35,943 nucleotides of DNA, taken from assembly GCF_001194135.2 (NCBI RefSeq), contig NC_068985.1:46306366-46342308 (forward strand), read 5' to 3'. Position 1 is the stretch's first letter. Each line of letters opens with the position of its first letter. Shown in pieces: positions 9,264 through 28,389 of this stretch. The notes beneath the pieces were generated by a model, which saw only the letters and a program-made list of their open reading frames with translations, searched no databases and had not been told where the DNA came from. Made by a program: the position numbers and the translations under genes. The DNA is from Octopus bimaculoides (Eukaryota).

Positions 9264-9425
9264 GCCTGATTTGAACTTCCTGAACCATCTTTCAACTTGG
9301 CTTTTGCTGATTGTTCCTTCACCAAAAAGTTCATTGAGATCGCGAAATGACTGTGCTGCATTCCAACCTTTCTTGAAGTGGTAGAGCACAATATGACGAA
9401 TGTGGATATGATTTCCGATATGCAT
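9264..9425 (-). CDS. Mariner transposase N-terminal HTH region (partial, runs into the gap)
   Basis: MHIGNHIHIRHIVLYHFKKGWNAAQSFRDLNELFGEGTISKSQVERWFRKFKSG matches the mariner/SETMAR HTH pattern IR...F+.G..AA.....+N..FG.GT.....V..WF+KF..G; no stop in 54 codons. Confidence 0.85.
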
Positions 9426-9539
9426 TTTTATGAAAAAAAAGCCGACCATTATTTAAAGATGTTTTTGTTAAATATTGTTATTGTTTTTGTTGAATAAAAT
9501 TTGTTGAAAAAATGCTGCTATAAGTATGCACCAACCCAA
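9264..9539 (-). mobile_element. Mariner (Tc1/mariner, Hsmar1-like) transposon 5' end with TIR and TA target site
   Basis: Minus strand begins TA|TTGGGTTGGTGCATACTT, similar to the Hsmar1 TIR TTAGGTTGGTGCAAAAGT; TA at 9540-9541; transposase ORF follows. Confidence 0.85.
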
Positions 9540-26545: not shown

Positions 26546-27196
26546 ACATCTTCAAATATACATGCATATATGTATGTGTGTGTATACACACATGTAATTG
26601 TGTCTCTATTTATATAATACAAGCTTCTGTCATTGCTGTCTGCCAGTTTCCAAGTTTCACTCATACGACATAGATTTATGGCATATACCTTTTGTTTGTG
26701 GTAATGTGTTGAACCTATGTCTGTGTGGAAAAAGGACAAATGATGATGGTGATGGTGATGAAGAAGTAGTAGTAATAGTAGTGGTTGTAGCATCTCCATT
26801 ATTTTAAATACATGACCCAGAGAAAAAAGTCTAAATACACTATGAGAGTCTGCCTAAACACATGATTCTGGCTGAAATATAGCCACACTAAGCACTTCAT
26901 GGATTGCTTTCTAAATGAAATGTAGCCAATATGTGGATAAAATAGGAGTTTAATATATATAACTTCTCCATGTTTAGTATGTAATACCCAGCATTTGTGA
27001 CAGACTTTATATAAGAAAGAAGCAGAAACTGGATAGGCTCTGAAAACTAGTATTGACAAAAAATAGGAAGCGTTTTCCAAAGGAGAAGCCAATGACTGAA
27101 TTACATCTGATATAAAAATGGTCATCAAATATCTTTATGGTCAGAATTTTTTACTTGTGGGAACTAAAGGTGGTAGACATAATCCATTGCCCAGGT

Positions 27197-27520
27197 CAGG
27201 GGTTCTCAACCATTTTCTTTTTTTTTTTTTTATCTGTGGACCCTTTTGATTTCTATTTTATTCTGATGCCCCCCCCCCCCTAACAGTTTGATGCTTTAAA
27301 AATCCTATGATATTTTTATAATTAAAAATTAGGAATTGTATAGAAAATTGGCTCTTCAGACCTCAGTCAAACTGTCCAACCCATGCCAGCATAGAAAACG
27401 GATGTTAGACGATGATGATGATTTTGTGTATTGTAGAAGTATAACTAAACACAAACTTTAACAACAAAATCTTACGTGGGTCTCCAAGGGCCATATATGG
27501 ACCCTGGTTGAGAATCACTG
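27197..27520 (-). mobile_element. hAT (Charlie-like) MITE, same family as 17772-18027, carrying a family A tail
   Basis: TIRs CAGGGGTTCTCAAC / GTTGAGAATCACTG; flanks GCCCAGGT / GCCTAGAT (6 of 8); body aligns to the reverse complement of 17772-18027. Confidence 0.85.
27343..27420 (+). mobile_element. 5'-truncated family A tail inserted in the MITE
   Basis: cagtcaaactgtccaacccatgccagcatagaaaacggatgttagacgatgatgatg. Confidence 0.85.
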
Positions 27521-27769
27521 GCCTAGATTAACATCTCTACCATCTGGCATTTTGGGTGTCTTTAGCAAGTGCTCTTTGTTGCTAGTGTTCAAGTGAAGTC
27601 TTTGGTTTGAGTACAGCAAAAGCAATTGGTCTCAAGCAGGCTGCAGCAAGACAACTGCAAAGCTTTGTATTTGTTTGCCTCCTTAGCTCTTCATTTCCTC
27701 TCATCTTAATCAGAACATGGTTGAGGTATGACAGTCACCTCGAGTGTGGCAATTCCCACAATGCCTAGG

Positions 27770-27813
27770 CATGTTTGAGTATCTGTGCTGCAAGGCACAG
27801 ATACTCAAACATG
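27770..27813 (+). other. Perfect 19-bp inverted repeat (hairpin) with TGCAAG loop; candidate small-RNA precursor
   Basis: CATGTTTGAGTATCTGTGC (27770-27788) is the exact reverse complement of GCACAGATACTCAAACATG (27795-27813); hairpin certain, function unknown. Confidence 0.9.
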
Positions 27814-27871
27814 ACTGGTGCCAAACTGTGAGTGCATCTGCATGTTATTCCACTGCTTAGTCACTCTATTA

Positions 27872-28257
27872 GTGAAGGTGCAATGGCTCAGTGGTTAGGG
27901 CAGCGGACTCGCGGTCATAGGATCACAGTTTCGATTCCCAGACCGGGCGTTGTGAGTGTTTATTGAGCGAAAACACCTAAAGCTCCACGAGGCTCCGACA
28001 GGGGGTGGTGGCGAACCCTGCTGTACTCTTTCACCACAACTTTCTCTCACTCTTACTTCCTGTTTCTGTTGTGCCTGTAATTCAAAGGGCCAGCCTTGTC
28101 ACGCTGAATATCCCTGAGAACTACATTAAGGGTACACGTGTCTGTGGATTGCTCAGCCACTTGCACGTAAATTTCACAAGCAGGCTGTTCCGTTGATCGG
28201 ATCAACTGGAACCCTCGACGTCGTAAGTGACGGAGTGCCAACAACAACAACAACAAC
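27872..28257 (+). mobile_element. tRNA-headed SINE family D, full length, young
   Basis: A box TGGCTCAGTGGTTA, B box GTTTCGATTCC, (CAA)n tail, perfect 13-bp TSD AGTCACTCTATTA (27859-27871 / 28258-28270). Confidence 0.95.
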
Positions 28258-28389
28258 AGTCACTCTATTAATTGAAGAGTTGTATACTCTTTGAGAAATA
28301 ATTCTATGCTCCTCATGATTTGTTAAAAGCCAGTTCCTATGTGTGCTGAGCATTTAGTGTGTTCTTATCATAAAGATGGGTCTAATCTC

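What the first reader, a model, noticed from the sequence alone, without database searches (positions are those of the whole stretch)
27755..27840. Perfect 19-bp hairpin with GCAA tetraloop in unique sequence: candidate novel miRNA or short-hairpin RNA
Seen: CATGTTTGAGTATCTGTGC-T-GCAA-G-GCACAGATACTCAAACATG gives 19 Watson-Crick pairs, a closing U-G and a GNRA-type loop on the + strand. After one mismatch the stem extends 4 more pairs (CTAG/CTGG), with a possible bulged basal stem (CACA/TGTG) and a CNNC (CATC, 27835-27838) about 18 nt past a plausible 3' Drosha cut. The arms are non-repetitive and belong to no TE family seen here. Established: coleoid cephalopods have a large expansion of novel miRNAs; short perfect stems with tiny loops characterise Dicer-independent miR-451-type precursors. 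Inference: a young intronic miRNA or Ago-processed hairpin, or a splicing/editing structure; alternatively a neutral template-switch inverted duplication.
Basis: partly seen in the sequence, partly recalled or inferred. Interest (0 to 1): 0.7.

Follow-up and report, generated by a model that had tools for sequence, protein, structure and literature searches.

The report
Neutral DNA palindrome reshaped by template switching
The perfect 19-bp hairpin is real and single-copy, but related species show it changing like neutral DNA, so it is most likely a replication template-switch palindrome and not a microRNA gene.

Summary
Arms 27770-27788 and 27795-27813 form 19 perfect pairs around TGCAAG. It is the only complex-sequence hairpin of this size in the window and is about 100,000-fold rarer than chance would give. 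It lies in single-copy DNA between a high-copy MITE-like element and a SINE.

The miRNA reading finds no support:
- No Rfam family matches.
- Two deep RNA-seq runs of the source species give zero reads over the hairpin.
- The stem is about 26 bp with a 4-6 nt loop, against the roughly 35 bp and 10 nt or more that Drosha prefers.
- No small-RNA library could be reached, so the direct test remains undone.

Contigs from four related lineages settle the evolutionary question. All carry the hairpin. Lineages B, C and D have the exact reverse complement of the loop (CTTGCA). D shares the neighbouring SINE insertion with the source, so the 'GCAA tetraloop' is a derived loop inversion, a known signature of replication template switching.

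The rest of the hairpin varies without compensation:
- an arm substitution in D that breaks a pair;
- a 2-nt indel at the stem base in B and C;
- an 11-nt deletion of the lower stem in one run;
- a segregating arm SNP in the source species.

No pair shows a compensatory change. Verdict: an ordinary, probably functionless palindrome, and a clean cephalopod example of a known mutation process.

The parts
27770..27788 (.). 5' arm of the palindrome (CATGTTTGAGTATCTGTGC)
   Evidence: It is identical in lineages A, B and C. Lineage D and run X44 have T>G at 27774, which breaks the pair with 27809.
27789..27794 (.). 6-nt spacer or loop TGCAAG. This orientation is derived in the source lineage. Relatives B, C, D and X44 carry the reverse complement, CTTGCA.
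   Evidence: One search shows that the reverse complement of 27770-27813 equals the D hairpin except at 27774.
27795..27813 (.). 3' arm of the palindrome (GCACAGATACTCAAACATG)
   Evidence: It is invariant in all five forms compared.
27763..27769 (+). 5' side of the weak 'lower stem' (GCCTAG pairs, then an unpaired G)
   Evidence: Fold. In B and C an extra AT after 27770 shifts its register, and their minimum-energy folds differ.
27814..27821 (+). 3' side of the weak 'lower stem' (A unpaired, CTGG, bulged T, GC)
   Evidence: Fold. Positions 27814-27824 are deleted in run X44, between ACTG direct repeats.
27783..27783 (.). Segregating C>T SNP in the 5' arm within the source species. It gives G.U on a + strand RNA and an A/C mismatch on a - strand RNA, and it breaks the DNA palindrome.
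   Evidence: T in runs X7, X8, X9 (study P3) and X42 (study P2). C in X1, X2, X4, X5 and X11.

Best explanation
This is a short DNA palindrome in single-copy, non-coding, transposon-rich DNA. It was made and later reshaped by template switching during DNA replication, where the nascent strand briefly copies the opposite arm. It has no demonstrable RNA function.

Shown: the hairpin predates the split of at least four lineages. The source lineage differs from its closest available relative by an exact inversion of the 6-nt spacer with no change in length. That is the 'loop inversion only' footprint of a template-switch mutation at a perfectly pairing stem. The other changes at the locus are uncompensated and look like neutral drift: an arm substitution, a 2-nt indel at the stem base, an 11-nt slippage deletion, an arm SNP, and SINE insertions on either side.

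Inferred: the original inverted duplication also arose by a template switch, and the locus is not processed into small RNAs.
For: 1. The perfect 19-bp stem is far beyond chance (1.2e-5 expected per window) and is the only such hairpin of complex sequence in the window. A mutational mechanism that copies in reverse complement is therefore needed.

2. Lineages B (4 runs), C, D and run X44 carry the loop CTTGCA, the exact reverse complement of TGCAAG, between the same arms. All six loop positions differ, against a flank divergence of about 5% (contig pieces with 25 differences in 482 nt and 26 in 565 nt). Point mutation cannot explain that. One reverse-complement copying event can.

3. Polarity. 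D's contig runs into the same SINE head at the same junction as the source. B has the clean empty site: contig 10 joins 27859 directly to 28259. So A and D group together and the source's loop orientation is the derived one.

4. There is no covariation. Of 25 pairs, none has a compensatory change, one is broken in D and X44, and one is a wobble SNP.

5. The lower stem is not conserved.

6. No RNA signal. Depth is 0 over 27573-27814 in two RNA-seq runs of the source species, each sampled at about 1.9 Gb. Four smaller RNA runs also gave nothing.

7. No Rfam family reaches its gathering score. The only hits are generic hairpin matches with E of 0.046 or higher and 14-24 bits, against cut-offs of 58-98.

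8. Published precedent. Template switching can create perfect stems in one event and can invert loops of perfectly pairing hairpins without leaving a mark in the stems. The cited work found 69 'loop inversion only' cases and the MIR633 loop inversion in baboons (PMC8794818). More than 6,000 such hairpins arose in primates, of which only a handful became miRNAs (PMC10710096).
Against: - No species without the hairpin was found, so its creation by a template switch is inferred and not observed.
- No small-RNA library could be examined, so processing into about 22-nt RNAs is not excluded.
- An 'RNA?' run of lineage B holds a 1,048-nt unspliced contig across the locus at depth 8.8. An 'RNA?' run of the source species has low-depth contigs nearby. 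So low-level transcription, whether intronic or pervasive, is possible, unless this is DNA carry-over.
- The arms have no fixed A-versus-B substitution, although about 1.8 would be expected. This is weak (P about 0.17) and can also be explained by arm homogenisation.
- The polarity argument rests on one shared SINE insertion.
Confidence: 0.8

Rival explanations
1. A young lineage-specific miRNA or short-hairpin RNA, either canonical or miR-451-like and Dicer-independent. It would be transcribed from an intron or a non-coding RNA and processed from this hairpin, possibly born from the template-switch palindrome.
For: The stem is perfect and very stable. The arm length of 19 nt passes the arm-complementarity criterion. 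Low-depth unspliced contigs cover or flank the locus in two 'RNA?' runs. The 27783 SNP keeps a G.U pair on the + strand. Template-switch hairpins are a documented source of new miRNAs (PMC10710096). Octopuses have many novel miRNAs (PMC9699675).
Against: The total stem is about 26 bp and the loop 4-6 nt, against the preferred 35 bp or so and 10 nt or more (criteria as quoted in PMC10710096). The lower stem of 6 pairs is too short for a Drosha cut that would leave a 17-19-bp precursor, and it is shifted in B and C and deleted in X44. There is an uncompensated arm mismatch in D and X44 and no covariation. Long RNA-seq depth is zero in the source species. There is no Rfam hit. Neither the arm sequence nor candidate seed sites appear in the supplements of the octopus miRNA survey. 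That last negative is weak, because full miRNA sequences are not in those files.
Confidence: 0.07
2. Another functional double-stranded RNA element within a longer transcript, such as an ADAR editing substrate or a structure that affects splicing.
For: The stem is stable on both strands. Low-level transcription is possible. A GTGAGT donor-like motif lies at 27827-27832.
Against: There are no reads over the hairpin in the two raw RNA-seq runs and no spliced joints outside repeats. No A>G differences could be seen because there is no coverage. A 19-20-bp stem is short for ADAR. The neutral-looking changes in relatives argue against it.
Confidence: 0.03
3. A remnant of a mobile element: a Helitron 3' hairpin (CTGG-T follows the stem at 27815-27819), a foldback element, or the fused terminal repeats of a MITE.
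For: A CTRR-T motif lies 1 nt after the stem. The surroundings are full of transposons.
Against: The hairpin and its flanks are single-copy. Where a DNA run returned contigs for the hairpin region, the hairpin lay on a single contig at 80-85% likeness, and the unitig is unbroken at single-copy depth. No second copy of the arm exists in the window. Helitron hairpins normally sit 10-12 nt before CTRR (general knowledge). No target-site duplication flanks the hairpin. The locus is collinear in all relatives.
Confidence: 0.03
4. A DNA-level functional palindrome, for example a binding site for a dimeric protein or a cruciform-forming regulatory element.
For: The inverted symmetry is retained in four lineages. 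Template switching is reported to expand palindromic transcription-factor sites in yeast promoters (abstract of PMC13100816).
Against: No gene or promoter is evident nearby. The long ORFs of the window are low-complexity or cross assembly gaps, and one carries a transposase-like N-terminus. Arm symmetry is broken in D, in X44 and by the SNP in the source species. A 19-bp half-site is far longer than known dimer sites.
Confidence: 0.03

Closest known systems
Template-switch mutation (TSM) hairpins and loop inversions (Loytynoja & Goldman 2017, PMC5453318; Monttinen & Loytynoja 2022, PMC8794818)
   Same: It is a perfect reverse-complement repeat that point mutations cannot produce. The difference between lineages is an exact inversion of the loop with its length kept and the stems untouched. 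That is the published 'loop inversion only' category, with the MIR633 baboon case as an example.
   Different: This is a cephalopod locus with no annotated RNA gene. Creation of the stem itself could not be observed, because every lineage sampled already has it. The 6-nt loop differs at all six positions, whereas most published cases are 4-nt, partly self-complementary loops.
TSM-born primate miRNAs (Monttinen, Frilander & Loytynoja 2023, PMC10710096)
   Same: The raw material is the same: a perfect hairpin in non-coding, possibly intronic DNA.
   Different: Those loci have small-RNA evidence and hairpins of pri-miRNA size. Here there is no expression evidence, the stem is about 26 bp, the loop is 4-6 nt, and decay in relatives is uncompensated. 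It belongs with the thousands of TSM hairpins that did not become genes.
miR-451-type Dicer-independent precursors
   Same: A short, perfect upper stem of 19-20 bp with a 4-nt loop on the + strand.
   Different: There is no sequence or Rfam similarity. The basal stem needed for Drosha is only 6 pairs and is not conserved. The tetraloop exists only in the source lineage. Reads running into the loop could not be tested.
Quasipalindrome-associated mutation in bacteria (general knowledge: Ripley 1982; later work in E. coli)
   Same: The proposed mechanism is the same: a switch within or between strands at an inverted repeat during replication, which perfects or inverts palindromes.
   Different: That work was shown experimentally in bacteria. 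Here the mechanism is only inferred, from a comparison of animal genomes.

Membership tests
Canonical animal miRNA gene (MirGeneDB-type criteria) | Discrete 20-26-nt reads from the arms with uniform 5' ends and 2-nt 3' offsets | not testable with these tools
   No miRNA-Seq run is served for this species. The small RNA-labelled runs proved to be long-RNA assemblies and held nothing.
Canonical animal miRNA gene (MirGeneDB-type criteria) | At least about 16 complementary nucleotides between the arms | tested here: met
   19 perfect pairs.
Canonical animal miRNA gene (MirGeneDB-type criteria) | Pri-miRNA geometry: a stem of about 35 bp and an unstructured apical loop of 10 nt or more (as quoted in PMC10710096) | tested here: not met
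   26 pairs including the weak lower stem, and a 4-nt (+) or 6-nt (-) loop.
Canonical animal miRNA gene (MirGeneDB-type criteria) | Hairpin kept in related species, with changes that preserve pairing | tested here: not met
   27774 T>G breaks a pair in D and X44. The lower stem is shifted in B and C and deleted in X44. None of the 25 pairs has a compensatory change.
Canonical animal miRNA gene (MirGeneDB-type criteria) | Transcription of the locus | tested here: inconclusive
   Depth is 0 in two raw RNA-seq runs. Low-depth unspliced contigs appear in two runs whose type was only guessed to be RNA.
Known miRNA family in Rfam 15 | Match at or above a family's gathering score | tested here: not met
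   No hit at gathering level. The best sub-threshold hit scores 23.9 bits against a cut-off of 70.
miR-451-type Dicer-independent precursor | A 17-19-bp pre-miRNA stem with a loop of about 4 nt, sitting on a basal stem of about 11 bp for Drosha | tested here: not met
   The upper stem and loop fit in the source lineage only. The basal stem is 6 pairs with a mismatch and a bulge, and it is not conserved.
miR-451-type Dicer-independent precursor | Mature reads of about 23-30 nt that start on the 5p arm and run into the loop, dependent on Ago slicing | not testable with these tools
   No small-RNA data.
Template-switch mutation hairpin | A reverse-complement repeat far longer than chance allows | tested here: met
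   Expected 1.2e-5 per window and 0.9 per 2.5 Gb. It is the only complex hairpin in the window.
Template-switch mutation hairpin | A cluster of differences between relatives explained by one reverse-complement copy whose source and target overlap both stem halves, with loop length kept (the loop-inversion rule of PMC8794818) | tested here: met
   The reverse complement of 27770-27813 equals the D hairpin except at 27774. The rule is quoted.
Template-switch mutation hairpin | An ancestral state without the repeat, showing that the stem was created in a single event | not testable with these tools
   All lineages retrieved (A, B, C, D, X44) already have the hairpin. Lineage E gave no contig over it.
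MITE, foldback element or Helitron end | Many copies in the genome with element-like flanks | tested here: not met
   Where a DNA run returned contigs for the hairpin region, the hairpin lay on a single contig, at single-copy depth. There is no other copy in the window.

The most novel reading that the evidence does not exclude
The palindrome is a proto-miRNA caught early. It would be a template-switch-born hairpin that is weakly transcribed within an intron and already yields Ago-loaded small RNAs in the source lineage. The recent loop inversion there re-perfected the stem and created a tetraloop. If so, it would tie the large expansion of octopus miRNAs to template switching as the source of new hairpins.
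Probability: 0.05. Interest if true: 0.6.

Novelty: new member of a known kind. Interest (0 to 1): 0.2.

Why it matters
As a gene candidate it does not hold up. That saves follow-up effort and shows that a perfect stem with a GNRA-like loop in a cephalopod genome is not in itself evidence for a miRNA.

As a mutation example it has modest value. It is a clean case, supported across several species, of a template-switch loop inversion at a perfect palindrome in an invertebrate, and a shared SINE insertion gives the polarity. The octopus miRNA survey states that the source of the novel cephalopod miRNA loci is unknown (PMC9699675). Hairpins like this one are plausible raw material, but this locus shows no sign of having been recruited.

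Tried and rejected
1. Rfam at gathering level and at permissive thresholds gave only generic hairpin noise.

2. A search for miRNA-Seq libraries returned none. I laid the four smallest RNA-labelled runs in case they were small-RNA libraries. They are long-RNA assemblies and hold nothing.

3. I searched the supplements of the octopus miRNA survey for the arm sequence and for 12 candidate seed sites and found nothing. A control search showed that those files list only 8-mer sites and not full sequences, and two of them are truncated. The negative is therefore weak.

4. My first reading was that one template switch explained both the loop inversion and the extra AT of lineages B and C. Single-switch solutions exist in both directions. 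I dropped this after lineage D showed the inverted loop without the AT. Two separate events are now more parsimonious.

5. A block with no substitutions between A and B (27750-27870, nominal P about 0.003) looked like constraint. I rejected that reading. It was chosen post hoc, it is marginal after correcting for windows, and lineage D has 27750, 27751 and 27774 changed inside it.

6. Run X13 seemed to lack the hairpin region. This turned out to be incomplete contig retrieval. The same tool missed contigs it had shown before, and missed X42's contig that appeared with another stretch.

7. The Helitron end, MITE and foldback readings were rejected on copy number.

8. ARAGORN finds no tRNA gene in the window, although the SINE has a tRNA-like head.

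9. Gene context. The long ORFs are low-complexity, cross assembly gaps, or (one) carry a transposase-like N-terminus. Whether the locus is intronic could not be settled.

Full report
**Observation**

Arms 27770-27788 (CATGTTTGAGTATCTGTGC) and 27795-27813 (its exact reverse complement) flank TGCAAG. As + strand RNA this folds into 20 pairs (19 Watson-Crick plus U-G) closed by a GCAA loop. Below that come a G/A mismatch, four pairs, a bulged U and two more pairs. The energy is -49.2 kcal/mol, with z = -5.3 against dinucleotide shuffles. The - strand folds almost as well, at -44.6 kcal/mol and z = -5.4.

A scan of the whole window for perfect stems of 12 bp or more with loops of 20 nt or less finds only (TA)n-type simple repeats apart from this hairpin. 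With the window's base composition, 1.2e-5 such 19-bp hairpins are expected per window and about 0.9 per 2.5 Gb. The arm has no other match in the window, even with three mismatches allowed.

**Setting**

The hairpin sits in a stretch of about 330 nt of single-copy DNA (27529-27859).

- Upstream is a MITE-like element. Its inverted ends are at 27193-27212 and 27505-27524. Its right end has a k-mer depth of about 10,000 in DNA runs where the hairpin unitig has 28-57.
- Downstream is a SINE with a tRNA-like head at 27872-28258. It carries a 12-nt target-site duplication, GTCACTCTATTA, at 27860-27871 and 28259-28270. An inverted copy of the SINE lies at 21013-21397.
- The window as a whole is AT-rich, full of microsatellites and transposon fragments, and has 1,635 N.
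- Its long ORFs are low-complexity or cross assembly gaps, and one carries a mariner-like transposase N-terminus.
- No tRNA gene and no Rfam family is found.

**Is it an RNA gene?**

- Rfam with permissive thresholds gives only generic matches of miRNA models to a perfect hairpin. The best scores 23.9 bits with E = 0.046 against a cut-off of 70, and such matches occur on both strands.
- Two raw RNA-seq runs of the source species, each sampled at about 1.9 Gb, have depth 0 over 27573-27814. The flanking SINEs collect thousands of reads from other copies.
- Four further RNA-labelled runs hold nothing.
- One run of the source species whose type was guessed to be RNA has short contigs at depth of about 3.5 on nearby unique sequence. 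One such run of a related species (B) has a 1,048-nt unspliced contig across the locus at depth 8.8. This may be intronic or pervasive transcription, or DNA carry-over.
- No miRNA-Seq run is served, so the direct test for about 22-nt products could not be done.
- The structure has 26 pairs in all and a 4-6-nt loop. The preference is for a stem of about 35 bp and an apical loop of 10 nt or more (as quoted in PMC10710096).
- For a miR-451-like route the basal stem, at 6 interrupted pairs, is too short.
- A CNNC motif (here CATC) is expected at about 3% of positions by composition, so it carries little weight.

**Comparative evidence (the decisive part)**

In source-species (A) DNA runs where the hairpin contig was retrieved, from at least seven samples in four studies, it carries the window form. 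The one exception is a C>T SNP at 27783 in the 5' arm, seen in four samples from two studies.

*Lineages B and C.* Lineage B (three DNA runs and one RNA-type run) and lineage C carry CATATGTTTGAGTATCTGTGC-CTTGCA-GCACAGATACTCAAACATG (rebuilt). The arms are unchanged. The loop is the exact reverse complement of TGCAAG, and an extra AT sits at the stem base.

*Lineage D and run X44.* X44 is labelled B, but it lacks two of B's substitutions (27719, 27741) and shares three of D's four. Both carry CATGGTTGAGTATCTGTGC-CTTGCA-GCACAG...: the inverted loop, no AT, and a T>G at 27774 that breaks the pair with 27809. X44 also lacks 27814-27824, a slippage deletion between ACTG repeats that removes the 3' half of the lower stem.

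The reverse complement of the source hairpin equals the D hairpin at every position except 27774.

**Polarity**

D's contig continues after 27869 into the same SINE head at the same junction as in the source. B has the clean empty site: one contig joins 27859 directly to 28259. A shared SINE insertion groups A with D, so CTTGCA, found in D, B and C, is ancestral. TGCAAG arose in the source lineage by a pure loop inversion. The AT indel is a separate event on the branch between (A,D) and (B,C). My earlier idea that one switch produced both changes is no longer the most parsimonious. The alternative of two independent inversions, one in D and one in B/C, needs one more event. I give it perhaps 15%, because perfect palindromes may be recurrent switching sites.

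**What this means**

All six loop positions differ, while the flanks differ by about 5%. Only a reverse-complement copying event explains that. It matches the published criteria for a template-switch loop inversion: source and target overlap both stem halves, and loop length is kept. It also matches the observation that such inversions occur at perfectly pairing hairpins without leaving a mark in the stems. The published work includes 69 such cases and the MIR633 example (PMC8794818).

Everything else at the locus behaves neutrally. On an alignment of the five forms, none of the 25 pairs shows a compensatory change, one pair is broken in two forms, and one pair has a wobble SNP. The lower stem is shifted or deleted in relatives. 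Two different SINE insertions have landed within 60 nt of the hairpin in different lineages.

The lack of any fixed A-versus-B arm substitution is not significant. About 1.8 are expected, giving P of about 0.17. It can also come from arm homogenisation by the switch itself.

**Mechanism proposed**

1. Inferred: in an ancestor of these lineages, a replication template switch copied about 19 nt in reverse complement and created a perfect palindrome with a 6-nt spacer.
2. Shown: the palindrome was inherited by lineages A, B, C and D.
3. Shown as a pattern, inferred as a mechanism: in the source lineage a second switch, from one arm across the spacer into the other arm, inverted the spacer and reset the arms to perfect complementarity.
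4. Shown: ordinary substitutions, slippage indels and SINE insertions accumulate without regard to pairing.
5. Inferred from the absence of evidence: no small RNA is made.

**Comparison with known systems**

The locus works like, and meets the testable criteria of, template-switch hairpins (PMC5453318, PMC8794818). It resembles the raw material of TSM-born miRNAs (PMC10710096), but it fails the tested miRNA criteria of geometry, conservation and family match. The read-based criteria could not be tested. It is not a multi-copy element.

**Verdict**

Novelty: a new member of a known kind. Interest is low (0.2). A residual chance of about 5-7% remains that it is a very young small-RNA locus, and one small-RNA mapping experiment would settle that.

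Noticed in passing
window 27860-28270: A SINE with a tRNA-like head and an (AAC)n tail lies at 27872-28258, flanked by a 12-nt target-site duplication, GTCACTCTATTA. It is absent from lineage B, which has the clean empty site, and present at the same junction in lineage D. It is therefore a usable phylogenetic marker. An inverted copy, 90-93% complementary, lies at 21013-21397.
   Followed up: yes
window 27193-27528: A MITE-like element with inverted ends AGGTCAGGGGTTCTCAACCA / TGGTTGAGAATCACTGGCCT. Its right end has a k-mer depth of about 10,000 in DNA runs, against 28-57 for single-copy DNA. It appears to be interrupted by a fragment of another repeat family (27363-27420, five copies in the window).
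   Followed up: partly
window 27753-27762 (lineage C, run X43): In lineage C two contigs overlap by 10 nt at this point and run off into unrelated sequence (CATCATCATCATTGTTCGACCGT...). This suggests a lineage-specific insertion with a 10-nt target duplication only 8 nt upstream of the hairpin.
   Followed up: no
run X44 versus runs X17, X18, X20, X25 (all labelled organism B): X44 carries the lineage-D haplotype (27743G, 27751G, 27774G, no AT insertion, none of B's substitutions). The species label of that 2016 run looks wrong, or it covers a cryptic species.
   Followed up: partly
window 27814-27824 (run X44): An 11-nt deletion lying exactly between two ACTG direct repeats, immediately 3' of the hairpin. 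It is a typical replication-slippage footprint.
   Followed up: partly
window 27750-27870: There is no fixed substitution between the source and lineage B over about 120 nt, although the flanks differ by about 5% (nominal P about 0.003, marginal after correcting for windows). Lineage D has three changes inside the block, so constraint is unlikely.
   Followed up: yes
window 9300-9449 (- strand): An ORF starts with a sequence resembling a mariner-type transposase N-terminus (HIRHIVLYHFKKGWNAAQSFRDLNELFGEGTISKSQVERWFRKFKSG). This was recognised by eye and not searched. The ORF runs into an assembly gap of Ns.
   Followed up: no
window 17330-17664 and 16040-16080: A tandem array of a 26-nt unit (about AGTGACACATAAGAGGCACCTGTGCC), with roughly 11 copies at 60-80% identity and a solitary related copy 1.3 kb upstream.
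   Followed up: no
Read laying on runs X13 and X42: Contig retrieval depends on the stretch submitted. A contig seen with one stretch was missed with another. Absence of a contig in these outputs should therefore not be read as absence of the sequence.
   Followed up: yes
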